Of a DNA stretch of 64,000 nt, positions 2,036-51,424 are shown one piece after another. The stretch comes from Squalus acanthias (Eukaryota). Position 1 is the first letter of the stretch. Each line of letters starts with the position of its first letter. The stretch is taken from contig JASTWF010000288.1 of assembly GCA_030390025.1 (NCBI GenBank), positions 248,001 through 312,000 of the forward strand, written 5' to 3'. The notes under the pieces were generated by a model. It did not search any database and was not told the origin of the DNA. It was given only the letters and a program-made list of their open reading frames with translations. Made by a program: the position numbers and the translations under genes.

Positions 2036-2859
2036 TTTCCCTCTGCTTCCTAAGAGTCACTGAAATTAAAAGTAATTTATTGTGTCGTTTGAGATATCAA
2101 CAGGAACTTGAGATGGATAAATACCAGTGTTACATATCATGTCTGCTGGCTGCCTCTCAGACTTTGCCGATAGTTGACAATGGACAATGTATAAAATCAC
2201 TTTTGCAATCTTGGCCGCTATTTTCCATTTCGGAGATTCACATAGAACACCCATGAGATTGGTCTGAAATTAAAGCAAAAGAAGATGAAACACTCAGCTC
2301 TTGGACATGTGTGCGAGTTGCACTGGGATTGCTCCTGCCTCGACCCTCCTTATGCCTCTGGGATGGCTCCCACTTGCCCCCGTCTGGAGAGTGATACACC
2401 TCATCCCTCTTGGCATAGTGTCCGAGGAATCAGGAACTCCCAGCACAGGGGAGTGTTGACTCTGACTCCATCCTCTTGGCATCACTGGCTTTGTCAGGAG
2501 AGGGCAGAGGTTCTGACATTTACCAAGCCGATCAGGAACGTCCCGAGTCAATGGGATTTGCCATGTCTGGGTCCCTGCCCTTTTCCCCGACACTCTGCCA
2601 GGGTTACAGCAGGACTCAGCTGAACTCGCCAGCAAATTCAGGACTAAGCACGGATGCAAATTCCCATCAGCACAGCTATCATCGTGGTCCATGGACGTTT
2701 TGGAAATCTCGGTCTATGCCCAGCTCCCATTCCTGACATTTTCCAACTCTCCCTGAAGAATTTAATGCAGATACATGACACTGATTGTATTGCATGTGTA
2801 ATCCACATCTCCATCTTCTACCTTCAAATCAAATCAGAGATCCCAGTCCAGAGGTCACA

Positions 2860-6619: not shown

Positions 6620-7700
6620 TGAAGTGCTGGGCTCCACCATCATTGAGGATGGGGATATTTATGGAGCCGCCTCCTCCTGTTATTTGTTTAATGGTCCACC
6701 ACCATTCACAACTGGATGTGGCGGGACTGCAGAGCTTTGATCTGATCCGTTGATTGTGGGATTGCTTAGCTCTGTCTATAGCATGCTGCTTCCGCTTTTT
6801 AGCATGCATGTAGTCCAGTGTTGCAGCTTTCCCAGGTTGGCACCTCATTCTTAGGTACGCCTGGTGCTGTTCCCGACATGCTCTTCTACACTCATTGTTG
6901 AACCAGGGTTGGTCCCCTGTCTTGATGGTAATAGTAGAGTGGAGGATATGCCGGGCCATGAGGTTACAGATGAGGAATACAATTCTGCTGCGGCTGATGG
7001 CCTACAGCGCCTCATGGATGCCCAGTTTTGAGCGGCTAGATCTGTTCTGAATCTACCCCATTTATCACGGTGGTGATGCCACACAACACGATGGAGGGTG
7101 TTCAGTGTGAAGACGGGACCTCGTCTTCACAATGACTGTGCGGTGGTCACTGCTACCAATGCTGTCATGGACAGATGCATCTGCGACAGGTAGATTGGTG
7201 AGGACGAGGTCAAGTAGGTTTTTCCCTCGTGTTGGTTCTTTCACCACCTGTCGCATCCCAGACTGGCAGCTATGACCTTCAATACTCGGCCAGCTCAGTC
7301 AGTAGTGGTGCTACCGAGCCACTCTTGGTGATGGACAATGAAGTCCCCCACCCAGGAGTATATTCTATGCCCTTGCTACTCTCAGTGCTTCTTCCAAGTG
7401 GTGTTCAACATGGAGGAGTACTGATTCATCAGCTGAGGGAGGGCGGTAGATGGTAATCAGCAGGAGGTTTCCTTGCCCATGCTTGACCTGAAGCCATGAG
7501 ACTTAATGGGGTCCAGAATCAATGTTGAGGAATCCCAGGGCCACTCCTTCCCGACTGTATACCACTGTGCCACCACCCCTGGTGGGTCCATCCTGCTGTT
7601 GGGACAGGACATACCCAGGGATGGTGATGGAGGAGTTTGGGACGCTGGTTAAAAGGTATGATTCTGTGAGTAAGGTTATGTCAGGCTGTTGATTGACTAG
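6620..7700 (-). mobile_element. LINE (CR1/L2 group) APE-endonuclease region
   Basis: QQPDITLLTESYL...RGGGTVVYSREG; QVVKEPTRGKNLLDLVLTN...GSSDH; IKTGDQPWFNNECRRAC. Confidence 0.8.
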
Positions 7701-7707
7701 GAAGTAC

Positions 7708-7983
7708 CTCACTAAGCAATGGTAATAAATTCATCCTGAAGTTGTCCGTTCCAATTACAGAACAACCACCAAATTGGACACGACCACGATACATCTGTGC
7801 ACATTCTTCATCACGGACCCTCATATTTATCGTTACATCTGTTTCACTCCAGGTGCCGTCGATTTTCAAATTATTACCATGCCCTTGGATACTTCCATCA
7901 GGTTCAAAGAGCAGAAATACTACAAATTCATGGTCAGATTCGGGTGAGTGAATTGCCCATTGACCAAATAAAGGCGATTTGCT
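7708..7983 (-). CDS. Predicted exon B (phase 0-0, 92 codons): second copy of an uncharacterised probable beta-barrel domain
   Basis: Acceptor ttttttttccag|AGC at 7983 and donor GAG|gtactt at 7708 (alternative A|gtgagg at 7713). Open frame SKSPLFGQW...EFVVFLLFEPDGSIQGHG...YRGRVQFGGCSVIGTD, homologous to exon A. Confidence 0.72.
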
Positions 7984-7997
7984 CTGGAAAAAAAAGG

Positions 7998-8275
7998 TCC
8001 CCATTAACAATAAACAAACATGTCCCAATTAAAAATAACCAAACATGTACCCATTACCAATAACCAAACATGTCCCCATTACCAATTAACAAACATGTCC
8101 CCATTAATAAACAAACATGTCCCCATTACCAATAAAGAAACATGACCCCATTAATAAACAAACATGTCCCCATTACCAAGAAACATGTCCACATTACCAA
8201 TAAACAAACATGTCACCATTACCAATAAAAAAACATTTCACCATTTCCAATAAACAAACAGCTCATTAAAAATAA
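7998..8275. repeat. 25-bp minisatellite, short degenerate array in the intron between exons A and B
   Basis: Unit aataaacaaacatgtccccattacc. Confidence 0.95.
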
Positions 8276-8570
8276 ACACATTTTTCAGTGCAGACATTAA
8301 ACCTTTTATAGCAAGTGTGTTCAAAGTGCAGAGAGAGAAACAGCACACTGATGTGTTAAGGGTCAGTGCTCCAACATCACATCAGGCATTTCTGTGTCCC
8401 CATATAGTCGTAATTTTCATGGAAATAGGTTGGGATTGTTTGCTGCGCTTGTATATTGCAGGAATGTGAGAAACTAAAGTGTTCACAATTGTACCGACAG
8501 CTCCACACATTATATAGAAACAATTCTGAATACAGTAGAGTGCCTTGGCTGGGAAAATGAGGGAACATAC

Positions 8571-8894
8571 CTTATTCCTGGTATCAATGCATTTCATACT
8601 CCATCCATCTTTTCCAGTAACTGCCCGGCCATTATAAGAAAATGTACCAGGATACTCCGCAACAATTTCCCCAGCAACACGTTTCTTCATGCAGAGTCCC
8701 TGGTTAATCAAATTGCCTTCTACATTAAACGGACCAGACTCATCACTGCCGTACCCTTTGATAGAACCATCACAGTTAAAGAGCAGGATTGCTACAAATT
8801 CAGGGTTCTCACTTGACATTCCAACGTTGAGTACTAATGGTGAATCGATCGATTGCTCATCATACTGTCTCTTCCATATCCCGCACACCGGAAC
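8571..8894 (-). CDS. Predicted exon A (phase 0-0, 108 codons): first copy of an uncharacterised probable beta-barrel domain
   Basis: Acceptor ttttttaaatccag|GTT at 8894 and donor AAG|gtatgt at 8571. Open frame VPVCGIWKRQ...EFVAILLFNCDGSIKGYGSDESGPFNVEG...YPGTFSYNGRAVTGKDGW, splicing in frame to exon B. Confidence 0.75.
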
Positions 8895-8904
8895 CTGGAT
8901 TTAA

Positions 8905-11900
8905 AAAACAAGCATGTCCCCATTACCAATAATCAAACATCTCCCCATTACCTTAAACAAACATGTCCCCATTCCCAATAAACAAACATGTCCCCGTTAC
9001 CAATAATCAAACATCTCCCCATTACCAATAATCAAACATCTCCCCATTACCAATAAACAAACATGTCCCCATTACCAATTAACAAACATGTCCCCATTAA
9101 TAAACAAACATGTCCCCATTACCAAGAAACATGTCCACATTACCAATAAACAAACATGTCCCCATTACCAATAAACAAACAACTCCCCATTACCAATAAA
9201 CAAACATGTCCCCATTACCAATAAACAAACATCTCCCCATTACCAGTAAACAAACATGTCCCCATTACCAATAAACAAACAACTCCCCATTACCAATAAA
9301 CAAACATGTCCCCATTACCAATAAACAAACAACTCCCCATTACCAATAAACAAACCTGTCCCCATTACCAATAAACAAACAACTCCCCATTACCAATAAA
9401 CAAACATGTCCCCATTACCAATAAACAAACAACTCCCCATTACCAAGAAACAAACATCTCCCCATTACCAAGAAACAAACATGTCCCCATTACCAATAAA
9501 CAAACAACTCCCCATTACCAATAAACAAACATGTCCCCATTACCAATAAACAAACATGTCCCCATTACCAAGAAACAAACATGTCCCCATTACCAATAAA
9601 CAAACATGTCCCCATTACCAATAAACAAACATGTCCCCATTACCAGTAAACAAACATGTCCCCATTACCAGTAAACAAACATGTCCCCATTACCAAGAAA
9701 CAAACATGTCCCCATTACCAATAAACAAACATGTCCCCATTACCAATAAACAAATATCTCCCCATTACCAGTAAACAAACATGTCCCCATTACCAGTAAA
9801 CAAACATCTCCCCATTACCAGTAAACAAACATGTCCCCATTACCAATAAACAAACATGTCCCCATTACCAATAAACAAACATGTCCCCATTACCAAGAAA
9901 CAAACATGTCCCCATTACCAATAAACAAACATGTCCCCATTACCAATAAACAAACATGTCCCCATTACCAATAAACAAACATGTCCCCATTACCAATAAA
10001 CAAACATGTCCCCATTACCAATAAACAAACATCTCCCCATTACCAAGAAACATGTCCCCATTACCAGTAAACAAACATCTCCCCATTACCAGTAAACAAA
10101 CATGTCCCCATTACCAGTAAACAAACATCTCCCCATTACCAATAAACAAACATGTCCCCATTACCAATAAACAAACATGTCCCCATTACCAATAAACAAA
10201 CATGTCCCCATTACCAATAAACAAACATGTCCCCATTACCAATAAACAAACATGTCCCCATTACCAATAAACAAACATCTCCCCATTACCAATAAACAAA
10301 CATGTCCCCATTACCAATAAACAAACATGTCCCCATTACCATAACAAACATGTCCCCATTACCAATAAACAAACATGTCCCCATTACCAATAACAAACAT
10401 GTCCCCATTACCAAACAAACATGTCCCCATTACCAATAAACAAACATGTCCCCATTACCAAAACAAACATGTCCCCATTACCAATAAACAAACATGTCCC
10501 CATTACCAATAAACAAACATCTCCCCATTACCAATAACAAACATGTCCCCATTACCAATAAACAAACATGTCCCCATTACCAATAAACAAACATGTCCCC
10601 ATTACCAAAACAAACATGTCCCCATTACCAATAAACAAACATGTCCCCATTACCAAACAAACCTGTCCCCATTACCAATAAACAAACATGTCCCCATTAC
10701 CAATAAACAAACATGTCCCCATTACCAATAAACAAACATGTCCCCATTACCAACAAACATGTCCCCATTACCAACAAACATGTCCCCATTACCAATAAAC
10801 AAACATGTCCCCATTACCAATAAACAAACATGTCCCCATTACCAATAAACAAACATGTCCCCATTACCAATAAACAAACATGTCCCCATTACCAATAAAC
10901 AAACATGTCCCCATTACCAATAACAAACATGTCCCCATTACCAATAAACAAACATGTCCCCATTACCAATAAACAAACATGTCCCCATTACCAATAAACA
11001 AACATGTCCCCATTACCAATAAACAAACATGTCCCCATTACCAATAAACAAACATGTCCCCATTACCAATAAACAAACATGTCCCCATTACCAACAAACA
11101 TGTCCCCATTACCAATAAACAAACATGTCCCCATTACCAATAAACAAACATGTCCCCATTACCAACAAACATGTCCCCATTACCAACAAACATGTCCCCA
11201 TTACCAATAAACAAACATGTCCCCATTACCAATACAAACATGTCCCCATTACCAATAACAAACATGTCCCCATTACCAATAAACAAACATGTCCCATTAC
11301 CAATAAACAAACATCTCCCCATTACCAAACAAACATGTCCCCATTACCAATAACAAACATGTCCCCATTACCAGTAAACAAACATCTCCCCATTACCAAT
11401 AACAAACATGTCCCCATTACCAATAAACATGTCCCCATTACCAATAAACAAACATCTCCCCATTACCAATAAACAAACATGTCCCCATTACCAATAAACA
11501 AACATGTCCCCATTACCAATAAACAAACATGTCCCCATTACCAATAAACAAACATGTCCCCATTACCAATAAACATGTCCCCATTACCAATAAACAAACA
11601 TGTCCCCATTACCAATAAACAAACATGTCCCCATTACCAATAAACAAACATGTCCCCATTACCAATAAACATGTCCCCATTACCAATAAACAAACATGTC
11701 CCCATTACCAATAAACAAACATCTCCCCATTACCAATAAACAAACATGTCCCCATTACCAATAAACAAACATGTCCCCATTACCAATAAACATGTCCCCA
11801 TTACCAATAAACAAACATGTCCCCATTACCAATAAACAAACATGTCCCCATTACCAATAAACAAACATGTCCCCATTACCAATAAACAAACATGTCCCCA

Positions 11901-14693
11901 TTACCAATAAACAAACATGTCCCCATTACCAATAAACAAACATGTCCCCATTACCAATAAACAAACATGTCCCCATTACCAATAAACAAACATGTCCCCA
12001 TTACCAATAAACAAACATGTCCCCATTACCAATAAACAACATGTCCCCATTACCAATAAACAAACATCTCCCCATTACCAATAAACAAACATGTCCCCAT
12101 TACCAATAAACAAACATGTCCCCATTACCAATAAACAAACATGTCCCCATTACCAATAAACAAACATGTCCCCATTACCAATAAACAAACATGTCCCCAT
12201 TACCAATAAACAAACATGTCCCCATTACCAATAAACAAACATGTCCCCATTACCAATAACAAACATGTCCCCATTACCAATAAACAAACATGTCCCCATT
12301 ACCAATAAACAAACATGTCCCCATTACCAATAAACAAACATGTCCCCATTACCAATAAACATGTCCCCATTACCAATAAACAAACATGTCCCCATTACCA
12401 ATAAACAAACATGTCCCCATTACCAATAAACAAACATGTCCCCATTACCAATAAACAAACATGTCCCCATTACCAATAAACATGTCCCCATTACCAATAA
12501 ACAAACATGTCCCCATTACCAATAAACAAACATGTCCCCATTACCAATAAACAAACATGTCCCCATTACCAATAAACAAACATGTCCCCATTACCAATAA
12601 ACAAACATGTCCCCATTACCAATAAACAAACATGTCCCCATTACCAATAAACAAACATGTCCCCATTACCAATAAACAAACATGTCCCCATTACCAATAA
12701 ACAAACATGTCCCCATTACCAATAAACAAACATGTCCCCATTACCAATAAACAAACATGTCCCCATTACCAATAAACATGTCCCCATTACCAATAAACAA
12801 ACATGTCCCCATTACCAATAAACAAACATGTCCCCTTTACCAATAAACAAACATGTCCCCATTACCAATAAACAAACCTGTCCCCATTACCAATAAACAA
12901 ACATGTCCCCATTACCAATAAACAAACATGTCCCCATTACCAGTAAACAAACATCTCCCCATTACCAATAAACAAACATGTCCCCATTACCAATAAACAA
13001 ACATGTCCCCATTACCAAGAAACATGTCCCCATTACCAATAAACAAACATGTCCCCTTTACCAATAAACAAACATGTCCCCTTTACCAATAAACAAACAT
13101 GTCCCCATTACCAATAAACAAACCTGTCCCCATTACCAGTAAACAAACATGTCCCCATTACCAATAAACAAACATGTCCCCATTACCAGTAAACAAACAT
13201 GTCCCCTTTACCAATAAACAAACATCTCCCCATTACCAATAAACAAACATCTCCCCATTACCAATAAACAAACATGTCCCCATTACCAATAAACAAACAT
13301 GTCCCCATTACCAATAAACAAACATGTCCCCATTACCAATAAACAAACATGTCCCCATTACCAATAAACAAACATGTCCCCATTACCAATAAACAAACAT
13401 GTCCCCATTACCAATAAACAAACATGTCCCCATTACCAATAAACAAACATGTCCCCATTACCAATAAACAAACATGTCCCCATTACCAATAAACAAACAT
13501 GTCCCCATTACCAATAAACAAACATGTCCCCATTACCAATAAACAAACATGTCCCCATTACCAATAAACAAACATGTCCCCATTACCAATAAACAAACAT
13601 GTCCCCATTACCAATAAACAAACATGTCCCCATTACCAAGAAACATCTCCCCATTACCAAGAAACATGTCCCCATTACCAAGAAACATGTCCCCATTACC
13701 AAGAAACATGTCCCCATTACCAAGAAACATGTCCCCATTACCAATAAACATGTCCCCATTACCAATAAACAAACATGTCCCCATTACCAAGAAACATCTC
13801 CCCATTACCAGTAAACAAACATCTCCCCATTACCAATAAACAAACATCTCCCCATTACCAACAAACAAACATGTCCCCATTACCAGTAAACAAACATGTC
13901 CCCATTACCAATAAACAAACATGTCCCCATTACCAAGAAACATGTTCCCATTACCAAGAAACATGTCCCCATTACCAAGAAACATGTCCCCATTACCAAG
14001 AAACATGTCCCCATTACCAAGAAACATGTCCCCATTACCAAGAAACATGTCCCCATTACCAAGAAACATGTCCCCATTACCAAGAAACATGTCCCCATTA
14101 CCAAGAAACATGTCCCCATTACCAAGAAACAAACATGTCCCCATTACCAATAAACAAACATGTCCCCATTACCAATAAACAAACATGTCCCCATTACCAA
14201 TAAACAAACATGTCCCCATTACCAATAAACAAACATGTCCCCATTACCAATAAACAAACATGTCCCCATTACCAATAAACAAACATCTCCCCATTACCAA
14301 TAAACAAACATGTCCCCATTACCAATAAACAAACATCTCCCCATTACCAATAAACAAACATGTCCCCATTACCAATAAACAAACATCTCCCCATTACCAA
14401 TAAACAAACATCTCCCCATTACCAATAAACAAACATGTCCCCATTACCAATGAACAAACATCTCCCCATTACCAATAAACATGTCCCCATTACCAATAAA
14501 CAAACATGTCCCCATTACCAATAAACAAACATGTCCCCATTACCAATAAACAAACATCTCCCCATTACCAAGAAACATCTCCCCATTACCAATAAACAAA
14601 CATGTCCCCATTACCAATAAACAAACATGTCCCCATTACCAATAAACAAACATGTCCCCATTACCAATAAACAAACATCTCCCCATTACCAAT
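8905..14693. repeat. 25-bp minisatellite array (aataaacaaacatgtccccattacc)n with 21-bp variants
   Basis: Directly visible tandem repeat of ~5.8 kb; 21-bp aagaaacatgtccccattacc runs near 13640-14120. Confidence 0.98.
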
Positions 14694-14694
14694 A

Positions 14695-21021: not shown

Positions 21022-21341
21022 CTCTTTTCTTGGCAGTTCCTCTGCACCAACTCGTGGCTCACAAGAAAAAGACAGGCATGATAAATCAAATGGGTATCCT
21101 TCAAGAAACACCAGAGGAGATTCAGAATCCTCAACACAGCATTCACCCAGCAGGCTGCTACTCTCCAGTCGTCCGCTGGACAATATTGAACAGAGCCTGA
21201 TGGAAATCTGTTCTGGTTTCAGAATTTGACTGCAGAGTAAAGGATTCTCGAAGACAGATGGTCCTGCTGGTCGATAATTAGTTCTGTGAGTGAAGTAAGA
21301 TACAAGACTGATCAGGAACATATTAAAAGAAACAATTCCAC
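21022..21341 (-). CDS. Predicted exon C (phase-1 acceptor or internal ATG at 21321; phase-0 donor) of the minus-strand exon chain
   Basis: Unique non-repeat sequence. Long pyrimidine tract with ctgac, then caag|GT at 21341; open frame ...MFLISLVSYFTHRTNYRPAGPSVFENPLL...EELPRKE; strong donor GAG|gtaagc at 21022, in phase with exon A. Confidence 0.5.
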
Positions 21342-21489: not shown

Positions 21490-21551
21490 CCAAACACTCC
21501 CAGGGCAGGTACAGCACGTGTTAGATACAGAGTAAAGCTCCCTCTACACTG
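21490..21551 (+). repeat. Single 65-bp satellite monomer
   Basis: caaacactcccagggcaggtacagcacgtgttagatacagagtaaagctccctctacactg. Confidence 0.9.
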
Positions 21552-21625
21552 CCATCTAGTGCTGCTCTCTGCTGAACTACCGTGTATTTGATTGTGATTG
21601 GATAGGAGCTGCCGTGGCCAATCCC
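21548..21625. promoter_or_regulatory. Putative proximal promoter of the class I gene: inverted CCAAT, CCAAT and a CTCF-like motif
   Basis: ATTGG at 21597-21601 and CCAAT at 21618-21622, ~70-95 bp upstream of ATG 21691. GCACTAGATGGCAG on the - strand at ~21549-21562. Confidence 0.5.
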
Positions 21626-21690: not shown

Positions 21691-21766
21691 ATGGCTTCTC
21701 TGCTGACGGCGGGCACAGCGTGTTTCTTTTTTATCTTCCTGTGCTGTTTTCATGATGCATATTCTG
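21691..21766 (+). CDS. MHC class I-like heavy chain, exon 1 (signal peptide)
   Basis: MASLLTAGTACFFFIFLCCFHDAYS-G has a hydrophobic core and an A-x-S cleavage site. Phase-1 donor G|gtaaga matches the alpha1 acceptor. Confidence 0.8.
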
Positions 21767-23656: not shown

Positions 23657-25505
23657 GTAAAGCTCCCTCTACACTGTCCCATCAAACACTCCCAGGGCAG
23701 GAACAGCACGAGTTAGATACAGAGTAAAGCTCCCTCTACACTGTCCCATCAAACACTCCCAGGGCAGGTACAGCACGGGGTTAGATACAGAGTAAAGCTC
23801 CCTCTACACTGTCCCATCAAACACTCCCAGGGCAGGTACAGCACGGGGTTAGATACAGAGCAAAGCTCCCTCTACAGTGTCCCATCACACAATCCCAGCG
23901 CAGGTACAGCACGGGTTAGATACAGAGTAAAGCTCCCTCTACACTGTCCCATCAAACACTCCCAGGGCAGGAACAGCACGAGTTAGATACAGAGTAAAGC
24001 TCCCTCTACACTGTCCCATCAAACACTCCCAGGGCAGGTACAGCACGGGGTTAGATACAGAGCAAAGCTCCCTCTACAGTGTCCCATCACACAATCCCAG
24101 CGCAGGTACAGCACGGGTTAGATACAGAATAAAGCTCCCTCTACACTGTCCCATCATACACTCCCAGGGCAGGTACAGCACGTGCTAGATACAGAGTAAA
24201 GCTACCCCTATGCAGGACCATCAAAAAACTCCCAGGGCAGGTTCAGCACAGGTTAGATACAGAATAAAGCGACCTCTACACTGTCCCATCAAAAAAAGTA
24301 AAAATTTTCCCAGTAAAAAAGTAAAAATTTTAAAGCTTTTCGTTTTACATACAGACGGCAGCTTTTGACACGTTAGAACCCCTGCGACGACACCTCATTG
24401 TCTCAGTTGTATCTTGCTATGTCTTTGATGTGGTACCTTCCTGGCTGACTTAATTAACTTTATCACACCTCGGCAGATAGTCAGGATGATTTAATTTAGT
24501 GGTCTGCAATTGTAAGGTACACATGCTTTGTTTTCTATCTATATATGCTTTGGCGATTCTGTATCTAATTTACTTCACCTGAGGAAGGAGCAATCGATAG
24601 CTCCGAAAGCTTGTGATTTCAAATAAAACTGTTGGACTATAACCTGGTGTTGTGCGACCTCTCAATTTTGTCCATCAAACACTCCCAGGGCAGATAGAGC
24701 ATGGGTTAGATACAGAGTAAATTTTACTTTACACTGTCCCCTTCAAACGTTTCTAGCACAGGTACAGAACAGTTTAGATGCAGAGTAAATCTCCCTCTAC
24801 ACTGTCCCATGAAACACTCCCAGGGCAGGTACAGCACGTGTTAGATACAGAGTAAAGCTCCCTCTACACTGTCCCAACAAACACTCCCAGGGCAGGTACA
24901 GCACGGATTTGATACAGAATAAAGCTCCCTCTACACTGTCCCATCAAACACTCCCAGGGCAGGTAGAGCACAGGTTAGATACAGAGTAAAGCTCCCTCTA
25001 CACTGTCCCATCAAACATTCCCAGGGCAGGTACAGCATGGGTTAAATACAGAGTAAAGCTCCCTCTGCACTGTCCCAACAAACACTCCCAGGGCAGGTAG
25101 AGCACAGGTTAGATACAGAGTAAAGCTCCCTCTACACTGTCCCAACAAACACTCCCAGGGCAGGTACAGCACGGATTTGATACAGAGTAAAGCTCCCTCT
25201 ACACTGTCCCATCAAACACTCCCAGGGCAGGTAGAGCACAGGTTAGATACAGAGTAAAGCTCCCTCTACACTGTCCCAACAAACACTCCCAGGGCAGGTA
25301 CAGCACGGATTTGATAGAGTAAAGCTTTCTTTACACTGTCCACATTAAACACCCCCAGGGCTGATAAAGCACAGGTTAGATACAGAGTAACTCTCCCTCT
25401 ACACTGTACCATCAAACATTCCCAGGGCAGGTACAGCATGGGTTAAATACAGAGTAAAGCTCCCTCTACACTGTCCCATCAAACACTCCCAGGGCAGGTA
25501 CAGAG
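23657..25505. repeat. 65-bp satellite array in MHC intron 1
   Basis: (gtaaagctccctctacactgtcccatcaaacactcccagggcaggtacagcacgggttagatacaga)n, interrupted at ~24292-24672. Confidence 0.96.
24292..24673 (+). mobile_element. Penelope-like terminal repeat fragment inserted in the 65-bp satellite
   Basis: Ends in cctgaggaaggagc...gctccgaaagcttgtgatttcaaataaaactgttggactataacctggtgttgtgcgacctctc, the same terminus as the 21995 element. Confidence 0.65.
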
Positions 25506-27373: not shown

Positions 27374-27634
27374 GTGGTCACTCCCTAAGTGTCCTACATA
27401 CAGAAATGGCGCAGTGCGCTGATTTCCCTGAGTTTCATGCGGTGGTGATGTTGGACGATACTGTGATCATGAACTATAACAGTGATACCAGCACTGTCCA
27501 TATTAAGCATGAATGGATCGCAAAACACTTAACTCCTGATCAGAAGGAGATTGACGATCTGTCCGCACGAGAGGCCCACAATATAATGAAAACAGGACTG
27601 AACAATACCATGAGACTGACCAAGAACACAGTCG
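27374..27634 (+). CDS. MHC class I-like heavy chain, exon 2 (alpha1 domain)
   Basis: cttccag|GT...G|gtgagt, 261 nt. GGHSLSVLHT...FPEFHAVVMLDDTVIMNYNSD...HEWI fits the alpha1 pattern HSLxxxxT/PEFxxVxxxDD/YxSD/W. Confidence 0.92.
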
Positions 27635-27859
27635 GTGAGTATTGATCAAGCGTATAAACTCAGTTTCCCAATTCCCCCGTGTGTGGTACTGAGCCCCACA
27701 CAGAGCAGGAAGAGCCCAGGTTTCATCCGGGTCTGTGCACAGTGAGCTGATCTATGACTGGATGGCAGTGTGTGTCCGGCACTGAGCTTCATTGTCGCTG
27801 TGCTGGGGAGGGCCAGAGTGAGCGAGGGTCCCTGTTCTAATCCCAATTATAGAAGAGCT

Positions 27860-28230: not shown

Positions 28231-28276
28231 CAGAGAGCACAGCGGTCGATGGGGAATGGGACTGAGGGAGAGCTCG

Positions 28277-28307
<31 letters not shown>

Positions 28308-28348
28308 CACAGGGAGCGACGGGGGAATGGGACTGAGGGAGAGCTCGA

Positions 28349-28381
<33 letters not shown>

Positions 28382-28424
28382 GATCACAGGGAGCGATGGG
28401 GGCATGGGACTGAGGGAGAGCTCG

Positions 28425-28460
<36 letters not shown>

Positions 28461-28567
28461 ACAGGGAGCGATGGGGGCATGGGACTGAGGGAGAGCTCGA
28501 TCAGAGAGAGAGAGAGAGAGAGAGCGCACAGGGGGCGATGGGGGAATGGGACTGAGGGGGGAGCTCG

Positions 28568-28609
<42 letters not shown>

Positions 28610-28648
28610 ACAGGGGGCGATGGGGGCATGGGACTGAGGGAGAGCTCG

Positions 28649-28686
<38 letters not shown>

Positions 28687-28795
28687 ACAGGGAGCGATGG
28701 GGGCATGGGACTGAGGGAGAGCTCGATCAGAGAGAGAGAGAGAGAGAGAGAGCACAGGGAGCGACGGGGGAATGGGACTGAGGGAGAGCTCGATC

Positions 28796-28827
<32 letters not shown>

Positions 28828-28868
28828 TCACAGGGAGCGATGGGGGCATGGGACTGAGGGAGAGCTCG

Positions 28869-28910
<42 letters not shown>

Positions 28911-29592
28911 ACAGGGGGCGATGGGGGAATGGGACTGAGGGGGAGCTCGATCAGAGAGAGAGAGAGAGGGAGCACAGGGGGCGATGGGGGAATGGGACTG
29001 AGGGAGAGCTCGATCAGAGAGAGAGAGAGAGAGAGAGGGAGAGCTCGATCAGAGAGAGAGAGAGCACAGGGGGCGATGGGGGAATGGGACTGAGGGAGAG
29101 CTCGATCAGAGAGAGAGCGAGCACAGGGGCGATGGGGGAATGGGACTGAGGGAGAGCTCGATCAGAGAGAGAGAGAGAGCACAGGGAGCGATGGGGGAAT
29201 GGGACTGAGGGAGAGCTCGATCAGAGAGAGAGAGAGCACAGGGGGCGATGGGGGAATGGGACTGAGGGAGAGCTCGATCAGAGAGAGAGAGAGAGCACAG
29301 GGAGCGATGGGGGAATGGGACTGAGGGAGAGCTCGATCAGAGAGAGAGAGAGCACAGGGGGCGATGGGGGAATGGGACTGAGGGAGAGCGCGATCAGAGA
29401 GAGAGAGAGAGAGAGCACAGGGGGCGATGGGGGAATGGGACTGAGGGAGAGCTCGATCAGAGAGAGAGAGAGAGAGAGAGAGTACAGGGGGCGATGGGGA
29501 ATGGGACTGAGGGAGAGCTCGATCAGAGAGAGAGAGAGCACGGGGGGCGATGGGGAATGGGACTGAGGAGAGAGCTCGATCAGAGAGAGCAC
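28230..29592. repeat. Compound minisatellite: ~45-bp unit plus variable (GA)n
   Basis: (gcacagggggcgatgggggaatgggactgagggagagctcgatca(ga)n)n. Confidence 0.95.
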
Positions 29593-29599
29593 CGGGTCT

Positions 29600-32500
29600 G
29601 AGCACTATTTCCCAGCTCCCTGTGCAGTGTCTCTGCACTGGTTCCTACCCCGGTGCACTGTATCTGCACTGGTTCCCGACCCCTGAGCACTTTTGCAGCA
29701 GTTTTTCCCAGCCCCTTTCACTCGGTCTCTTCACTGTTCCCCTATACATGTGCACGGTCTCTGTACTGGTTCCCAGCCTCCTGCGCACTGTCTCTGAACT
29801 AGTTCACTTCCCCAATGCACTGTCTCTGAACTGGTACCTTAACCCTGCGCACGCTCTCTGCACTGGTTCCCAGCCCCCTGTGCACACTGTCTCTGCACTG
29901 GTTCCCAGCCCCCTGTGCACACTGTCTCTGCACTGGTTCACAGCCCCCTGTGCACACTGTCTCTGCAGTGTTTCACAGCCCCCTGTGCACACTGTCTCTG
30001 CACTGGTTCACATCCCCCTGTGCACACTGTCTCTGCACTGGTTCACAGCCCCCTGTGCTCTGTCTCTGCACTAGTTCACAGCCCCCTGTACACACTGTCT
30101 CTGCACTGGTTCACAGCCCCCTGTGCACACTGTCTCTGAACTGGTTCCCAGCCCCCTGTGCACACTGTCTCTGCACTGGTTCCCAGCCCCCTGTGCACAC
30201 TGTCTCTGCACTGTTTCACAGCCCCCTGTGCAGACTGTCTCTGCACTGGTTCCCGGCGCACTGTGCACACTGTCTCTGCACTGGTTCCCGGCCCCCTGTG
30301 CACACTGTCTCTGCACTGGTTCCCGGCCCCCTGTGCACTGTCTCTGCACTGTTCGCCAGCCCCCTGTGCTCTGTCTCTGCACTGGTTCACAGCCCGCTGT
30401 GCACACTGTCTCTGCACTGGTTCCCGGCCCCCTGTGCACACTGTCTCTGCACTGGTTCCCGGCCCCCTGTGCACTGACTCTGCACTGGTTCACAGCCCCC
30501 TGTGCACACTGTCTCTGCACTGGTTCACAGCCTCCTGTGCACACCGTCTCTGCACTGTTTCACAGACCCCTGTGCACACTGTCTCTGCACTGGTTCCCAG
30601 CCCACTGTGCACACTGTCTCTGCACTGGTTCCCGGCCCCCTATGCACACTGTCTCTGCACTGGTTCACAGCCCCCTGTGCACACTGTCTCTGCACTGTTT
30701 CACAGGCCCCTGTGCACACTGTCTCTGCACTGGTTCCCAGCCCCCTGTGCTCTGTCTCTGCACTGGTTCCCAGCCCCCTGTGCACACCGTCTCTGCACTG
30801 GTTCACAGCCCCCTGTGCTCTGTCTCTGCACTGGTTCCCAGCCCCCTGTGCACACTGTCTCTGCACTGTTCGCCAGCCCCCTGTGCTCTGTCTCTGCACT
30901 GGTTCACAGCCCCCTGTGCACACTGTCTCTGCACTGGTTCACAGCCTCCTGTGCACACTGTCTCTGCACTGTTTCACAGACCCCTGTGCACACTGTCTCT
31001 GCACTGGTTCCCAGCCCACTGTGCACACTGTCTCTGCACTGGTTCCCGGCCCCCTATGCACACTGTCTCTGCACTGGTTCACGGCCCCCTGTGCACACTG
31101 TCTCTGCACTGGTTCACAGCCCCCTGTGCACACTGTCTCTGCAGTGTTTCACAGCCCCCTGTGCACACTGTCTCTGCACTGTTTCACAGGCCCCTGTGCA
31201 CACTGTCTCTGCACTGGTTCCCAGCCCCCTGTGCTCTGTCTCTGCACTGGTTCACAGCCCCTTGTGCACACTGTCTCTGCACTGGTTCACAGCCTCCTGT
31301 GCACACTGTCTCTGCACTGTTTCACAGACTCCTGTGCACACTGTCTCTGCACTGGTTCCCAGCCCACTGTGCACACTGTCTCTGCACTGGTTCCCGGCCC
31401 CCTATGCACACTGTCTCTGCACTGGTTCACAGCCCCCTGTGCACACTGTCTCTGCACTGGTTATCAGGCGCCTGTGCTCTGTCTCTGCACTGTTTCCAGC
31501 CCCCTGTGCACACTGTCTCTGCACTGGTTCCCAGCCCCCTGTGCACACTGTGTCTGCACTAGTTCACAGCCCCCTGTGCACACTGTCTCTGCAGTGTTTC
31601 ACAGCCCCCTGTGCACACTGTCTCTGCACTGGTTCCCGGCCCCCTGTGCACACTGTCTCTGCAGTGTTTCACAGCCCCCTGTGCACACTGTCTCTGCACT
31701 GGTTCCCAGCCCCCTGTGCACACTGTCTCTGCACTGGTTCCCAGCCCCCTGTGCACACTGTCTTGGCACTGGTTCCCAGCCCCCTGTGCACACTGTCTCT
31801 GCACTGGTTCACAGCCCCCTGTGCACACTGTCTTTGCACTGGTTCCCAGCCCCCTGTGCACACTGTCTCTGCACTGGTTCACAGCCCCCTGTGCACACTG
31901 TCTCTGCACTGTTTCCAGACCCCCCTGTGCACACTGTCTCTGCACTGGTTCCCAGTCCCCTGTGCACACTGTCTCTGCACTGTTTCCCAGCCCCCTGTGC
32001 ACACTGTCTCTGCACTGGTTCCCGGCCCCCTGTGCACACTGTCTCTGCAGTGTTTCACAGCCCTCTGTGCACACTGTCTCTGCACTGTTTCCAGACCCCC
32101 CTGTGCACACTGTCTCTACACTGGTTCCCAGTCCCCTGTGCACACTGTCTCTGCACTGTTTCCCGGCCCCCTGTGCACACTGTCTCTGCACTGGTTCCCA
32201 GCCCCCTGTGCTCTGTCTCTGCACTGGTTCCCAGCCCCCTGTGCACACTGTCTCTGCACTGGTTCCCGGCCCCCTGTGCACTGACTCTGCACTGGTTCAC
32301 AGCCCCCTGTGCACACCGTCTCTGCACTGGTTCACAGCCCCCTGTGCTCTGTCTCTGCACTGGTTCCCAGCCCCCTGTGCACACTGTCTCTGCACTGTTC
32401 GCCAGCCCCCTGTGCTCTGTCTCTGCACTGGTTCACAGCCCCCTGTGCACACTGTCTCTGCACTGGTTCACAGCCTCCTGTGCACACTGTCTCTGCACTG

Positions 32501-34208
32501 TTTCACAGACCCCTGTGCACACTGTCTCTGCACTGTTTCACAGGCCCCTGTGCACACTGTCTCTGCACTGGTTCCCAGCCCCCTGTGCTCTGTCTCTGCA
32601 CTGGTTCCCAGCCCCCTGTGCACACCGTCTCTGCACTGGTTCACAGCCCCCTGTGCTCTGTCTCTGCACTGGTTCCCAGCCCCCTGAGCACACTGTCTCT
32701 GCACTGGTTCCCAGCCCCCTGTGCACACTGTCTCTGCACTGGTTCCCAGCCCCCTGTGCACACTGTCTCTGCACTGGTTCCCAGCCCCCTGTGCACACTG
32801 TCTCTGCACTGTTCGCCAGCCCCCTGTGCTCTGTCTCTGCACTGGTTCACAGCCCCTTGTGCACACTGTCTCTGCACTGGTTCACAGACTCCTGTGCACA
32901 CTGTCTCTGCACTGGTTCCCAGCCCACTGTGCACACTGTCTCTGCACTGGTTCCCGGCCCCCTATGCACACTGTCTCTGCACTGGTTCACAGCCCCCTGT
33001 GCACACTGTCTCTGCACTGGTTATCAGGCGCCTGTGCTCTGTCTCTGCACTGTTTCCAGCCCCCTGTGCACACTGTCTCTGCACTGGTTCCCAGCCCCCT
33101 GTGCACACTGTGTCTGCACTAGTTCACAGCCCCCTGTGCACACTGTCTCTGCACTGGTTCCCAGCCCCCAGTGCACACTGTCTCTGCACTGGTTCACAGC
33201 CCCCTGTGCACACTGTCTCTGCACTGGTTCACAGCCCCCTGTGCACACTGTCTCTGCACTGGTTCCCAGCCCCCAGTGCACACTGTCTCTGCACTGGTTC
33301 ACAGCCCCCTGTGCACACTGTCTCTGCAGTGTTTCACAGCCCCCTGTGCACACTGTCTCTGCACTGGTTCCCGGCCCCCTGTGCACACTGTCTCTGCACT
33401 GTTTCACAGCCCCCTGTGCACACTGTCTCTGCACTGGTTCCCAGCCCCCTGTGCACACTGTCTCTGCACTGGTTCCCAGCCCCCTGTGCACACTGTCTTT
33501 GCACTGGTTCCCAGCCCCCTGTGCACACTGTCTCTGCACTGGTTCACAGCCCCCTGTGCACACTGTCTTTGCACTGGTTCCCAGCCCCCTGTGCACACTG
33601 TCTCTGCACTGTTTCCAGACCCCCCTGTGCACACTGTCTCTGCACTGTTTCCCAGTCCCCTGTGCACACTGTCTCTGCACTGTTTCCCAGCCCTCTGTGC
33701 ACACTGTCTCTGCACTGGTTCCCGGCCCCCTGTGCACACTGTCTCTGCAGTGTTTCACAGCCCTCTGTGCACACTGTCTCTGCACTGTTTCCAGACCCCC
33801 CTGTGCACACTGTCTCTGCACTGGTTCCCAGTCCCCTGTGCACACTGTCTCTGCACTGTTTCCCGGCCCCCTGTGCACACTGTCTCTGCACTGGTTCCCA
33901 GCCCCCTGTGCACACTGTCTCAGCATTGGTTGACAGCCCCCTGTGCACACTGTCTCAGCATTGGTTCACAGCCCCCTGTGCACACTGTCTCTGCACTGGT
34001 TCACAGCCCCCTGTGCACACTGTCTCTGCATTGGTTCCCGGCCCCCTGTGCACACTGTCTCTGCACTGGTTCACAGCCCCCTGTGCACATTGTCTCAGCA
34101 CTGGTTCCCAGCCCCCTGTGCACACTGTTTCTGCACTGGTTCCCAGCCCCCTGTGCACACTGTCTCTGCACTGGTTCCCAGCCCCCTGTGCACACTGTCT
34201 CTGCACTG
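29600..34208. repeat. 35-bp satellite array in MHC intron 2
   Basis: (gcacactgtctctgcactggttcccagccccctgt)n with 33-bp variants and a degenerate left edge. Confidence 0.97.
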
Positions 34209-34415
34209 GAGAACACCAAGGACCCCAGGCGACAGTAGGCCTCAGGCCTCCAGCTTAATTTCCTTTGGTGGGGCACCCAAGGATCCTTCATGCCCACTAT
34301 CGTATTCTCAGGCCCAATAGTCTGAATCTGGCCTAACCGATAATCTCTACAGGTGCAACATTAATTCTTCATTGCGAGTTTGGTGATTCTTTTCCGAATG
34401 TTCATTCTCTTTCAG

Positions 34416-34690
34416 GCCCCCACCTATTTCAGTGGATGAAGAAGGTCGAGGTAAATGATGATGGCCTTGTGAATTGGGACGTACTCTTCCGGTTCGATGG
34501 CAAGGATTTCATTCGACTGGACCAGCACACCATGAACTGGGTCGTGGTGAGCCCTGAAGCAAAGAGCTTCGAGAGACAGTTTACCAAAGAGCCAGACTGG
34601 CGAAACACCTGGAGGGAAACTCTAAACACACCGTGGTCGTTGGATTGAACGATCTGCTTCAGAAAGGCAAACAGTTTGTGGAAAGAAAGA
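34416..34690 (+). CDS. MHC class I-like heavy chain, exon 3 (alpha2 domain), frameshifted near 34625-34632
   Basis: ctctttcag|GC CCC CAC...AAG A|gtacgt. PHLFQWM..VEV.DDG...FDGKDFIRLDQHTMNWV; after restoring 1 nt it reads TVVVGLNDLLQKGKQFVERK. Length is 275 nt, one short of 276. Confidence 0.88.
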
Positions 34691-44840: not shown

Positions 44841-44878
<38 letters not shown>

Positions 44879-50924: not shown

Positions 50925-51424
50925 NNNNNNNNNNNNNNNNNNNNNNNNNNNNNNNNNNNNNNNNNNNNNNNNNNNNNNNNNNNNNNNNNNNNNNNNNNNN
51001 NNNNNNNNNNNNNNNNNNNNNNNNNNNNNNNNNNNNNNNNNNNNNNNNNNNNNNNNNNNNNNNNNNNNNNNNNNNNNNNNNNNNNNNNNNNNNNNNNNNN
51101 NNNNNNNNNNNNNNNNNNNNNNNNNNNNNNNNNNNNNNNNNNNNNNNNNNNNNNNNNNNNNNNNNNNNNNNNNNNNNNNNNNNNNNNNNNNNNNNNNNNN
51201 NNNNNNNNNNNNNNNNNNNNNNNNNNNNNNNNNNNNNNNNNNNNNNNNNNNNNNNNNNNNNNNNNNNNNNNNNNNNNNNNNNNNNNNNNNNNNNNNNNNN
51301 NNNNNNNNNNNNNNNNNNNNNNNNNNNNNNNNNNNNNNNNNNNNNNNNNNNNNNNNNNNNNNNNNNNNNNNNNNNNNNNNNNNNNNNNNNNNNNNNNNNN
51401 NNNNNNNNNNNNNNNNNNNNNNNN
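50925..51424. other. Assembly gap (500 N)
   Basis: Run of exactly 500 N, which suggests a nominal scaffold gap size. Confidence 0.99.

What the first reader, a model, noticed from the sequence alone, without database searches (positions are those of the whole stretch)
7708..8894. Two satellite-embedded exons encode tandem copies of an unannotated probable beta-barrel domain
Seen: two unique islands between satellite arrays have clean minus-strand AG/GT boundaries, are both phase 0-0, are open and splice in frame. They align with each other along their length: PVCGIW/PLFGQW, EFVAILLFNCDGSIKGYG/EFVVFLLFEPDGSIQGHG, FNVEG/LKIDG, RVAGEIVAE-YPG/RVRDEECAQMYRG, GRAVTGKD/GCSVIGTD. Preserved frames despite this divergence point to an old exon duplication kept under selection. 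Inference: the N-terminal GxW and alternating beta-strand/Gly-turn pattern suggest a calycin-type (avidin/lipocalin-like) barrel. From memory, G-x-G-x-D-x-x-G-x-F-x-[IV]-x-G resembles uncharacterised barrel proteins of microbes and invertebrates. I recognise no vertebrate family for it.
Basis: partly seen in the sequence, partly recalled or inferred. Interest (0 to 1): 0.85.

Follow-up and report, generated by a model that had tools for sequence, protein, structure and literature searches.

The report
Expressed shark-type gene with two beta-barrels
The two islands are real, spliced exons of an unannotated gene, and each encodes one small eight-stranded beta-barrel of an undescribed protein family otherwise found in protists, a cnidarian and a mollusc.

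Summary
Exon A (8894-8571, minus strand, 108 codons) and exon B (7983-7708, 92 codons) are open, have AG/GT borders and are phase 0-0. They are 31% identical, E 2e-10.

Transcript contigs from three studies end exactly at these borders. One contig joins 8571 to 7983. It runs on into an exon starting at 2263. Other contigs link exon A to an exon ending at 21022. The four exons give an open model of 365 codons. I never joined them in any tool.

Neither exon matches a Pfam family. An exhaustive HMMER search of 1.84 billion proteins found 16 hits at E <= 1e-3 and no close orthologue. The hits I examined are tandem arrays of a ~95-residue unit with no Pfam model of its own. Named sources are Hydra, the snail Gigantopelta and the protist Rhodelphis. 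Some members are fused to TIR or aquaporin domains.

AlphaFold gives an 8-stranded up-and-down barrel. Its best structural matches are designed barrels and avidins, Z 8-10. A tree pairs A with B (99/92), next to mollusc units.

Function, selection and orthologues remain untested.

The parts
21022..21321 (-). Upstream exon spliced onto exon A, and putative first coding exon. It holds 100 open codons from the only in-frame ATG after a stop (21321), with donor GAG|GTAAGC at 21022/21021. The true 5' end and start codon are not determined.
   Evidence: The 27-letter loose end of contigs in X1, X3 and X9 at 8896 maps uniquely, with 0 mismatches, to 21024-21050 on the minus strand. Frame and ATG scan are, the donor. 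No Pfam match.
8906..14694 (.). 25-bp satellite array (238 copies) inside the 12,127-nt intron 1. It ends 11 nt before the acceptor of exon A.
   Evidence: TRF, sequence, intron length.
8571..8894 (-). Exon A, 108 codons, phase 0-0. It encodes one complete 8-stranded barrel unit with a 22-residue low-confidence loop between strands 1 and 2.
   Evidence: for sequence and borders. Contigs end at 8571 and 8896. Family HMM score 34.0 bits, E 1.3e-12. AlphaFold pLDDT 84.4.
7997..8260 (.). Short array (11 copies) of the same 25-bp satellite in the 587-nt intron 2. It abuts the acceptor of exon B.
7708..7983 (-). Exon B, 92 codons, phase 0-0. It is a second, more diverged barrel unit that lacks 4 residues of the G.G.D..G.F hairpin.
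   Evidence: The junction 8571->7983 is in X3 contig record 11. Family HMM score is only 10.0 bits, and only with filters off. It pairs with exon A in the tree.
2066..2263 (-). Last coding exon: 65 codons plus stop TAA (2068-2066), acceptor TTAATTTCAG|ACC, and an AATAAA at 2081-2076.
   Evidence: The 28-letter loose end of contigs at 7708 (X1, X3, X9) and at 8571 (X3) maps uniquely to 2236-2263 on the minus strand. No Pfam match.
21691..21766 (+). Neighbour, not part of the gene: the leader-like exon of an MHC class I-like gene on the opposite strand. Its ATG lies 370 nt from the putative ATG of the barrel gene, in a head-to-head arrangement.
   Evidence: Sequence. The alpha1-like (27406-27645) and alpha2-like (34436-34648) ORFs are on the + strand, with MHC_I E 0.0019 and 2.8e-6, both below the Pfam cut-off.

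Best explanation
SHOWN. Exons A and B are two internal coding exons of a transcribed, spliced, four-exon gene on the minus strand (about 21321 to 2066). The gene is absent from the protein collections I searched. Each exon encodes one autonomous copy of a ~95-residue domain that folds as an 8-stranded up-and-down antiparallel beta-barrel with avidin-like topology. The domain belongs to an uncharacterised sequence family with no Pfam or NCBIfam model. In that family units occur in tandem (1 to 6 detected per stored protein). Members come from marine protists and metagenomes, Hydra and a mollusc, and some are fused to TIR domains or to the C-terminus of aquaporins. The two window units are each other's closest relatives, so they arose by a one-exon tandem duplication. 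That duplication came after the split from the mollusc units with which they group.

INFERRED. Because both exons are phase 0-0, either can be skipped or copied without breaking the frame. A second expressed variant joins an exon-A-like sequence straight to the last exon. The protein is most likely a soluble, probably cytosolic, two-barrel binding module that holds a small ligand or a peptide in or at the mouth of each barrel. The long variable loop of barrel A may be a specificity element. I put the binding-module function at about 0.3. The confidence below is for the identity of the feature, not for this function.
For: Splicing. X3 contig record 11 (420 nt, depth 60, 0 differences) covers 8686-8571, then 7983-7708, then 28 nt that match 2263-2236. 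The skipped 587 nt end CT..AC on the + strand, which is GT..AG on the minus strand. Contigs of X1, X3 and X9 (three studies) stop exactly at 7708, 8571 and 8896 with the same loose ends. Exon depth is 60-160 (X1, X3) and 13-33 (X9), against 0-8.5 in the unique part of the intron.

Open model. 100 + 108 + 92 + 65 codons, with the stop in the last exon. All donors and acceptors are canonical.

Family. The A+B profile gave 16 proteins at E <= 1e-3 among 1.84 billion, best 8.6e-10. An HMM built from 178 units of other proteins scores exon A at 34.0 bits, E 1.3e-12. P0001 retrieved 56 relatives, of which 8 carry TIR_2 and 3 carry MIP. Named members are Hydra XP_047145451.1, Gigantopelta XP_041357081.1 and a Rhodelphis EukProt entry.

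Fold. The two-unit relative P0020 gave pLDDT 90.4 with 8 strands per unit. Exon A gave pLDDT 84.4, pTM 0.73 and 8 strands. VIA-align gave 6d0t Z 10.1 (rmsd 2.2 over 85 residues), agroavidin Z 9.1 and streptavidin Z 8.4-8.6.

Duplication. A+B have support 99/92, inside a 7-row group (96/89) with three Gigantopelta-cluster units and two P0020 units.
Against: The run type of X1, X3 and X9 is only a guess ('RNA?'). I infer RNA from the junctions and the low intron depth.

The 5' end and the start codon are not established. Exon 1 and the last exon match nothing.

Exon B scores only 10 bits against the family HMM and lacks part of the hairpin motif. Both units have lost the family's KQY.GAH positions and the W.IPG hairpin.

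The 5 differences displayed for the second variant are all non-synonymous. This fits relaxed constraint as well as diversification.

No orthologue was found, so constraint is untested.

Structural Z scores of 8-10 to designed barrels and avidins show a common fold, not homology or function. The tool's own note says a best Z of 7-8 is typical for models without a clear match. Foldseek gave no match at E <= 1e-3 for the single-domain model.

Residues 2-10 of the exon-1 peptide are hydrophobic (KD9 2.11), so a secretory route is not excluded.

The tree uses 15 chosen proteins, and both window rows sit on long branches.
Confidence: 0.78

Rival explanations
1. The gene is transcribed but decaying. 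The exons descend from a barrel gene and are still spliced, but the protein is no longer functional or is not made.
For: Exon B is weak against the family HMM (10 bits). Family-conserved KQY.GAH and W.IPG positions are lost in both units. All 5 displayed differences to the second variant are non-synonymous. No close protein appeared in the exhaustive search. The N- and C-terminal exons match nothing.
Against: 365 codons are open across four exons, with the stop in the last exon. The one indel seen between variants is 3 nt. The exon A model is confident in every strand. Transcript depth is 60-160 in two runs.
Confidence: 0.13
2. The barrel exons are the cytoplasmic tail of the neighbouring MHC class I-like heavy chain.
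For: The same 25-bp satellite recurs in inverted orientation at 51425-64000, downstream of the class I-like exons. A second expressed exon-A-like variant exists, so a mirrored copy beyond the window's end is possible.
Against: For the copy in this window, the class I-like leader, alpha1 and alpha2 ORFs are on the + strand. Exons A and B are on the minus strand and are spliced to minus-strand exons at 21022 and 2263. The two genes diverge head to head. No contig links a barrel exon to class I sequence.
Confidence: 0.03
3. The exons are a transposon-borne or horizontally acquired ORF, or assembly contamination, rather than a host gene.
For: The surroundings are full of LINE fragments and satellites. 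Most relatives come from protist or metagenome data.
Against: No transposon family matched either exon. The domain is split one unit per exon by spliceosomal introns holding the host's own satellite and repeats. The nearest units in the tree belong to the cluster of a mollusc protein, which fits vertical descent within animals. Two scans of 185,579 bacterial and archaeal species genomes with two subfamily alignments found nothing.
Confidence: 0.03
4. It is a secreted avidin-like or lectin-like defence protein that binds biotin or glycans outside the cell.
For: Avidins are the best natural structural matches, Z 7.8-9.1. OAA-family lectins top the Foldseek list for the two-unit relative, E 1.1e-5. 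They are also the nearest named Atlas clusters, 0.83-0.85. Residues 2-10 of the exon-1 peptide are hydrophobic.
Against: There is no Avidin or OAA Pfam hit even at E <= 10. Identity to the avidins is 7-12%. The OAA matches have TM 0.22 and rmsd 18 A. Family fusions to TIR and to the aquaporin C-terminus point to the cytosol. No 19-residue window reaches the usual transmembrane hydropathy level; the maximum is 1.43.
Confidence: 0.05

Closest known systems
Uncharacterised tandem-barrel proteins: Hydra vulgaris XP_047145451.1 (P0007), Gigantopelta aegis XP_041357081.1 (P0009), a Rhodelphis limneticus EukProt TIR fusion (P0078), and many unnamed marine metatranscriptome and metagenome proteins
   Same: They share the ~95-residue unit and its conserved positions: W in strand 1, G.G.D..G.F.I.G, Y.G and G. 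The unit has 8 strands and occurs in tandem in one chain. In the tree the window units group with the Gigantopelta-cluster units.
   Different: The window units are the most divergent rows, at 17-32% identity. They lack the KQY.GAH and W.IPG...G motifs. Exon A carries a 22-residue loop insertion and exon B a 4-residue deletion. It is the only vertebrate-type locus seen, and it has one unit per phase 0-0 exon.
Avidin/streptavidin family (Pfam PF01382)
   Same: An 8-stranded up-and-down antiparallel barrel of about 110-125 residues. Matches: agroavidin 8amh Z 9.1 (rmsd 2.7, 84 aligned), streptavidin 6gmi Z 8.6, zebavidin Z 8.0, chicken BBP Z 7.8.
   Different: Identity is 7-12% and there is no Pfam Avidin hit at E <= 10. 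Here two barrels sit in one chain, whereas avidins are, from recall, oligomers of single-barrel chains. Biotin-binding residues were not tested. A signal peptide was not established.
De novo designed 8-stranded beta-barrels (PDB 6d0t, 6czj, 8ah9)
   Same: These are the best structural matches: Z 10.1, 9.7 and 9.5, rmsd 2.2-2.7 A over 85-86 residues. This shows that the domain is a near-ideal minimal barrel.
   Different: They are artificial proteins with no evolutionary relation, so the match speaks to geometry only.
Lipocalin/calycin superfamily
   Same: An 8-stranded barrel with a Trp in the first strand (GIW in A, GQW in B). The calycin GxW signature is from recall. One relative gives a weak Lipocalin_4 hit (P0002, E 0.039, below cut-off).
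   Different: No lipocalin family passes its threshold on the exons or on the 18 relatives scanned. In the family consensus the Gly precedes nothing conserved; the pattern is W.G.Y. No lipocalin is among the top 50 VIA rows. A Bacteroides 'lipocalin family protein' appears only at Foldseek E 0.29.
OAA-family lectins (BOA 4gk9, MBHA 4fbr, SfL 7umj; Pfam PF17882)
   Same: Tandem repeats that build beta-barrel-like domains. They give Foldseek E 1.1e-5 to 3.4e-5 with the two-unit model and are the nearest named Atlas cluster.
   Different: TM is 0.22-0.24 and rmsd 18 A. For the single exon-A model E is only 0.25. The OAA repeat is ~66 residues (start of the abstract of PMC8166773, seen in the listing), against ~95 here. 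There is no Pfam SBD hit.

Membership tests
Uncharacterised tandem ~95-residue barrel family (no Pfam name; defined here from 178 units) | Significant match of a single unit to a family HMM built without the window's sequences | tested here: met
   Exon A scores 34.0 bits, E 1.3e-12 for a search space of one. Exon B scores 10.0 bits, E 4e-5, and only with the filters off, so it is a member mainly through its similarity to exon A. The seed units were first picked with a profile of A+B, so the test is not fully independent.
Uncharacterised tandem ~95-residue barrel family (no Pfam name; defined here from 178 units) | Hairpin motif G.G.D..G.F.[IV].G | tested here: met
   Exon A has GYGSDESGPFNVEG. 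Exon B keeps G.G and the final G but lacks four residues including D..G.
Uncharacterised tandem ~95-residue barrel family (no Pfam name; defined here from 178 units) | KQY.GAH.V.Y.G and G.W.IPG...G.F motifs of strands 5-8 | tested here: not met
   Only the K, the Y.G and the last G/aromatic positions are kept. The GAH positions are replaced and the W.IPG hairpin is deleted in both exons. The window units are therefore a divergent branch of the family.
Uncharacterised tandem ~95-residue barrel family (no Pfam name; defined here from 178 units) | Eight-stranded barrel per unit, with units in tandem in one chain | tested here: met
   P0020 has 8 + 8 strands at pLDDT 90.4. Exon A has 8 strands at pLDDT 84.4. 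Exon B directly follows exon A in the transcript.
Avidin family (PF01382) | Sequence match to the family model | tested here: not met
   No hit at E <= 10 for either exon. Identity to avidin structures is 7-12%.
Avidin family (PF01382) | 8-stranded up-and-down barrel | tested here: met
   Z 7.8-9.1 and rmsd 2.7-2.9 A over 81-84 residues.
Avidin family (PF01382) | Biotin-binding pocket residues and biotin binding | not testable with these tools
   Model coordinates are not readable here and there is no binding assay.
Lipocalin/calycin | Match to a lipocalin-type Pfam model | tested here: not met
   None for the exons. The only hit is a sub-threshold Lipocalin_4 match in one relative (E 0.039).
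OAA-family lectin (PF17882) | Sequence match and ~66-residue repeat forming a 10-stranded barrel | tested here: not met
   No Pfam hit. The unit here is ~95 residues with 8 strands. Foldseek TM is 0.22.
MHC class I heavy chain (as a cytoplasmic extension) | Same strand and same transcript as the class I-like exons | tested here: not met
   The class I-like exons are on the + strand. The barrel exons are on the minus strand and are spliced to minus-strand exons.

The most novel reading that the evidence does not exclude
The barrel unit would be an undescribed, ancient eukaryotic intracellular sensor or binding module. It is coupled to TIR domains and to aquaporin tails in protists and other uncultured organisms. 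In vertebrates it would survive only as this cartilaginous-fish gene. That gene shares a ~370-bp bidirectional promoter with a non-classical MHC class I-like gene and would work with it, for example by handling the ligand that the class I-like groove presents. Its fast-changing strand 1-2 loop would act as the specificity determinant.
Probability: 0.07. Interest if true: 0.8.

Novelty: new variant of a known kind. Interest (0 to 1): 0.5.

Why it matters
This adds a transcribed, spliced gene to a satellite-choked, MHC class I-linked region where no protein had been predicted. It also brings to light a whole domain family, hundreds of units in the sequences fetched here, that has no Pfam or NCBIfam model and no study that I could find.

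The family's fusions to TIR domains and to aquaporins suggest a regulatory or sensing role. That role could be tested once the fold and a ligand are known.

A vertebrate member with one barrel per symmetric exon is a clean example of domain duplication by exon duplication. The head-to-head pairing with a class I-like gene gives a concrete co-regulation hypothesis.

If the gene turns out to be lineage-restricted and decaying, it is only an annotation fix.

Tried and rejected
Searches that found nothing:
- Pfam on both exons: nothing, best E 0.13.
- Pfam on exon 1 and on the last exon: nothing.
- NCBIfam on the exons and four relatives: nothing.
- PDB sequence search with exon A (best E 0.31) and with the 34-row profile (best E 0.47): nothing.
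- Word-indexed homologue search with exon A: no candidate.
- The same search with the unit alignment A3: 15 short unnamed family members and no vertebrate name.
- Foldseek on the single-domain model: no match at E <= 1e-3.

The OAA-lectin lead from Foldseek and the Atlas was rejected on TM 0.22, rmsd 18 A and a different repeat length.

The two genome-contig scans used only two subfamily alignments and exact-word patterns. Their blanks do not exclude bacterial members. The Atlas lists unnamed bacterial clusters at 0.91-0.92, which I did not verify.

Earlier-findings look-ups by sequence and by words found no second copy in this genome.

Three paper searches gave nothing on this family or on this locus. 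I saw only the listings and the starts of abstracts and read no paper. None of the searches could target the family by name, because it has none, so I do not claim that it is absent from print. Supplementary files were not consulted.

dN/dS could not be computed. Only 5 of at least 14 differences between the two expressed variants were displayed.

Exon B and the joined two-barrel protein were not folded.

Six proteins (P0003, P0006, P0010, P0011, P0012, P0016) were dropped from the unit work. I read the sequence of P0003 only; its repeats looked like a different kind. I did not look at the other five.

The tree used units of 15 proteins chosen by me from the 79 stored at that point. The 110-row tree was only the quick version. 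It also paired A with B (SH-aLRT 84).
Full report
1. THE OBSERVATION

On the minus strand, 8894..8571 reads as 108 sense codons and 7983..7708 as 92. The borders are canonical:
- Exon A: acceptor AAATCCAG|GTT, donor AAG|GTATGT.
- Exon B: acceptor TTTTTTCCAG|AGC, donor GAG|GTACTT.

Both lengths are multiples of three, so both exons are phase 0-0.

Tandem Repeats Finder places a 25-bp satellite at 7997-8260 (11 copies) and at 8906-14694 (238 copies). Exon A therefore sits between two arrays. Exon B has the satellite only at its acceptor. Beyond its donor lies an interspersed repeat with read depths in the thousands and a LINE-type endonuclease remnant (below the Pfam cut-off).

The two peptides align over 89 positions with 31% identity, E 2e-10. 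In a six-frame search of the whole window each finds only the other (E 5e-7 and 9e-8). The next hits have E >= 0.67.

2. THE EXONS ARE EXPRESSED AND SPLICED

The look-up of sequencing runs listed nine runs from three studies that hold 0.41-0.61 of the sampled words of 7708-8894. Their kind is only guessed ('RNA?'). I laid X1, X3, X9 and one raw single-cell RNA run, X10, on 7300-8960.

- X3 contig record 11 (420 nt, depth 60, no differences) covers 8686-8571, jumps to 7983-7708, and ends in 28 letters that lie on nothing in the stretch. The skipped 587 nt end CT..AC on the + strand, which is GT..AG for a minus-strand transcript.
- X1 record 3 covers exon B exactly. It runs on for 12 letters that equal the end of exon A, and for the same 28 letters at the other side.
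- Contigs of X1, X3 and X9 also stop at 8896 with one common 27-letter loose end.
- Depth over the exons is 60-160 in X1 and X3 and 13-33 in X9. It is 0-8.5 over the unique part of the intron (8308-8531).
- A DNA library would cover that intron like the exons. I therefore take these runs for RNA and the joints for splicing. A retrocopy in DNA is not formally excluded, because the table of joined forms in other runs was not given.
- X10 has only 0-4 reads per bin on the exons and none on the unique part of the intron.

3. THE GENE MODEL

The two loose ends map uniquely and exactly to 21024-21050 and to 2236-2263, both on the minus strand.

The upstream exon ends at 21022 (GAG|GTAAGC). It is open for 100 codons back to the only in-frame ATG after a stop, at 21321.

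The downstream exon starts at 2263 (TTAATTTCAG|ACC). It is open for 65 codons to TAA at 2068-2066, and an AATAAA lies at 2081-2076.

The introns are 12,127, 587 and 5,444 nt. Adding the parts gives 365 codons, with the stop in the last exon. All searches and folds were made exon by exon.

The transcription start and the true initiator are not established. Neither flanking exon matches a Pfam family. No 19-residue window reaches transmembrane-like hydropathy (maximum 1.43). Residues 2-10 of the exon-1 peptide are hydrophobic, so a signal-like start cannot be excluded.

A second expressed variant exists. Contigs in X1, X3 and X9 differ from the window at 6-7 positions per ~116-240 nt of exon A. 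They also carry a 3-nt insertion behind 8629. One of them (X3 record 13) joins the exon-A-like sequence directly to the last exon. This is either a paralogue or allele lacking exon B, or exon-B skipping. Because of the 0-0 phases, the frame is kept either way.

The five differences that the tool displayed are all non-synonymous: D12H, L20S, L22R, S28R and Y48H. Four lie in the strand 1-2 loop. At least nine more differences were not displayed, so no dN/dS can be given.

4. WHAT THE DOMAIN IS

Neither exon matches Pfam at E <= 10, apart from a chance-level 0.13 hit. Neither matches NCBIfam or PDB sequences.

An exhaustive HMMER search with a profile of A+B against 1.84 billion representatives gave 16 proteins at E <= 1e-3, none at E <= 1e-10, and a best of 8.6e-10. 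A protein containing these exons would have scored far higher. The gene and any close orthologue are therefore absent from that collection.

The hits I examined are tandem arrays of a ~95-residue unit. Its consensus is close to W.G.Y.Q.G...M......G.(I/V).G.G.D.VG.F.I.G......F.KQY.GAH.V.Y.G....I.G.W.IPG...G.F.L.

With P0001 as query, 56 relatives were found among 2,852 candidates. Eight carry TIR_2 and three carry the MIP (aquaporin) domain ahead of two C-terminal units.

Of the 20 cluster representatives looked up, three carry organism names: Hydra vulgaris, Gigantopelta aegis and Rhodelphis limneticus. Three more are marine metatranscriptome entries carrying only run accessions; the others are unnamed metagenome or Logan assemblies.

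None of the 18 relatives scanned has a Pfam family over the unit itself.

An HMM built from 178 units of these proteins, without the window's sequences, scores exon A at 34.0 bits (E 1.3e-12 for a search space of one). It scores exon B at 10.0 bits, and only with the filters off.

In the 34-row unit alignment the window units keep:
- the strand-1 Trp;
- the G.G.D..G.F.I.G hairpin (exon B lacks four of its residues);
- the Y.G position and the later Gly.

They have lost the KQY.GAH positions and the W.IPG hairpin. Exon A has a 16-residue insertion after strand 1, which makes up most of its 22-residue strand 1-2 loop.

5. THE FOLD

The two-unit relative P0020, folded with 45 aligned sequences, gives pLDDT 90.4 and eight strands per unit. 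Its pTM is 0.54, as expected for two loosely coupled domains.

Exon A, folded with the 34-row alignment, gives pLDDT 84.4, pTM 0.73 and eight strands. Confidence is low only in residues 11-30.

VIA-align against 48,161 chains ranks the matches as follows:
- designed 8-stranded barrels first: 6d0t Z 10.1, rmsd 2.2 A over 85 residues; 6czj Z 9.7;
- then agroavidin (Z 9.1), streptavidins (Z 8.4-8.6), a bacterial domain of unknown function 8t0b (Z 8.4), zebavidin (Z 8.0) and chicken biotin-binding protein (Z 7.8);
- lower down, Cap15 and a chain (7nsc_D) of the human CTLH E3 ligase substrate-receptor module (Z 7.4-7.5).

Foldseek finds nothing at E <= 1e-3 for this model. For the two-unit model it lists OAA-type lectins at E ~1e-5, but with TM 0.22 and rmsd 18 A. 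I regard those as meander-sheet similarity only.

Membership in the avidin, lipocalin or OAA sequence families is not met.

6. THE DUPLICATION

In a careful IQ-TREE of 43 units (93 columns) from 15 chosen proteins plus the two exons, A and B form a pair with support 99/92. The pair sits inside a group (96/89) with the three units of the Gigantopelta-cluster protein and the two units of P0020. A quick tree of 110 units gave the same pairing at SH-aLRT 84.

The two exons therefore arose by duplication of a single-unit exon after the split from the mollusc units. The animal affinity argues for vertical descent rather than recent transfer.

Both window rows are long branches, so attraction cannot be ruled out.

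Each exon carries the 25-bp satellite at its acceptor. I did not test this.

7. NEIGHBOURHOOD

The class I-like ORFs are on the + strand: alpha1-like at 27406-27645 and alpha2-like at 34436-34648, with MHC_I E 0.0019 and 2.8e-6, both under the Pfam cut-off.

A leader-like exon, ATG 21691 to a GT donor after 21766, lies 370 nt from the putative ATG of the barrel gene, on the opposite strand.

The two genes are therefore head to head, as note s1-890057 proposed. This copy of the barrel exons cannot be a cytoplasmic tail of the class I-like chain (note s1-889959).

The same satellite in inverted orientation fills 51425-64000, after an N gap at 50925-51424. A mirrored second copy beyond the window cannot be judged.

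8. HOW IT MOST LIKELY WORKS

Shown:
- a spliced transcript;
- two homologous, barrel-encoding, symmetric exons;
- membership of a wider tandem-barrel family.

Inferred:
- Each barrel is an independent binding unit.
- The family's fusions to TIR and to the aquaporin C-terminus point to a cytosolic sensing or regulatory role. TIR and the aquaporin C-terminus are cytosolic from established knowledge, which I did not test here.
- The window protein has lost several family-conserved polar positions, so its ligand, if any, probably differs.
- The loop of barrel A, where four of the five displayed variant residues fall, may set specificity.

I give about 0.8 to the identity of the feature and about 0.3 to the binding-module function.

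The rivals (decaying gene, class I tail, mobile or foreign ORF, secreted avidin- or lectin-like protein) are set out in their own sections.

9. NOVELTY AND VERDICT

The fold is a known kind. The sequence family has no curated model in the libraries I searched and no description that I could find. This locus is the only vertebrate-type member seen here.

That makes it a new variant of a known kind, of moderate interest. It is a solid annotation and domain-family lead, not yet a new mechanism.

Three paper searches (listings and starts of abstracts only) bore no result on the family. I cannot claim that it is unpublished.

Noticed in passing
window 21691-21766 (+), 27406-27645 (+), 34436-34648 (+): An MHC class I-like gene on the + strand (leader-like exon, alpha1-like and alpha2-like ORFs) diverges head to head from the barrel gene. 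The two putative ATGs are 370 nt apart. Its introns are filled with a 35-bp satellite (29753-34209) and AG-rich arrays (28232-29589).
   Followed up: partly
window 51425-64000 and 8906-14694; N run 50925-51424: The same 25-bp satellite occurs twice in opposite orientation: 238 copies and, after an assembly gap, 504 copies running to the window's end. A mirrored duplicate of the locus may lie beyond the window.
   Followed up: no
window 8571-8896 (transcript contigs of X1, X3, X9): A second expressed exon-A-like variant is about 94-97% identical and has an in-frame 3-nt insertion behind 8629. It appears in runs labelled as two organisms. One contig joins it directly to the last exon without exon B. 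All 5 displayed differences change the amino acid.
   Followed up: partly
proteins P0064, P0066, P0072, P0073, P0075-P0078; P0047, P0049, P0054: Family members are fused to TIR_2 domains (three or two barrel units interleaved with one or more TIR domains) or to the C-terminus of a MIP/aquaporin channel. This points to a sensor or regulator role for the barrel unit in protists and other uncultured organisms.
   Followed up: partly
window 7300-7700 (-): A LINE fragment with an endonuclease remnant starts within about 10 nt of the donor of exon B. It is covered at depths of hundreds to thousands in all four runs, so it is a highly expressed or highly repeated element.
   Followed up: no
window 23657-25503 and 21540-21600: A 67-bp tandem array (about 28 copies in all) lies at 23657-25503. 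A single related copy sits in the spacer between the two divergent genes.
   Followed up: no
window 41369-49186: About 8 kb of CT-rich degenerate tandem repeats (periods 28, 30 and 50) with strong strand asymmetry lies downstream of the class I-like exons.
   Followed up: no
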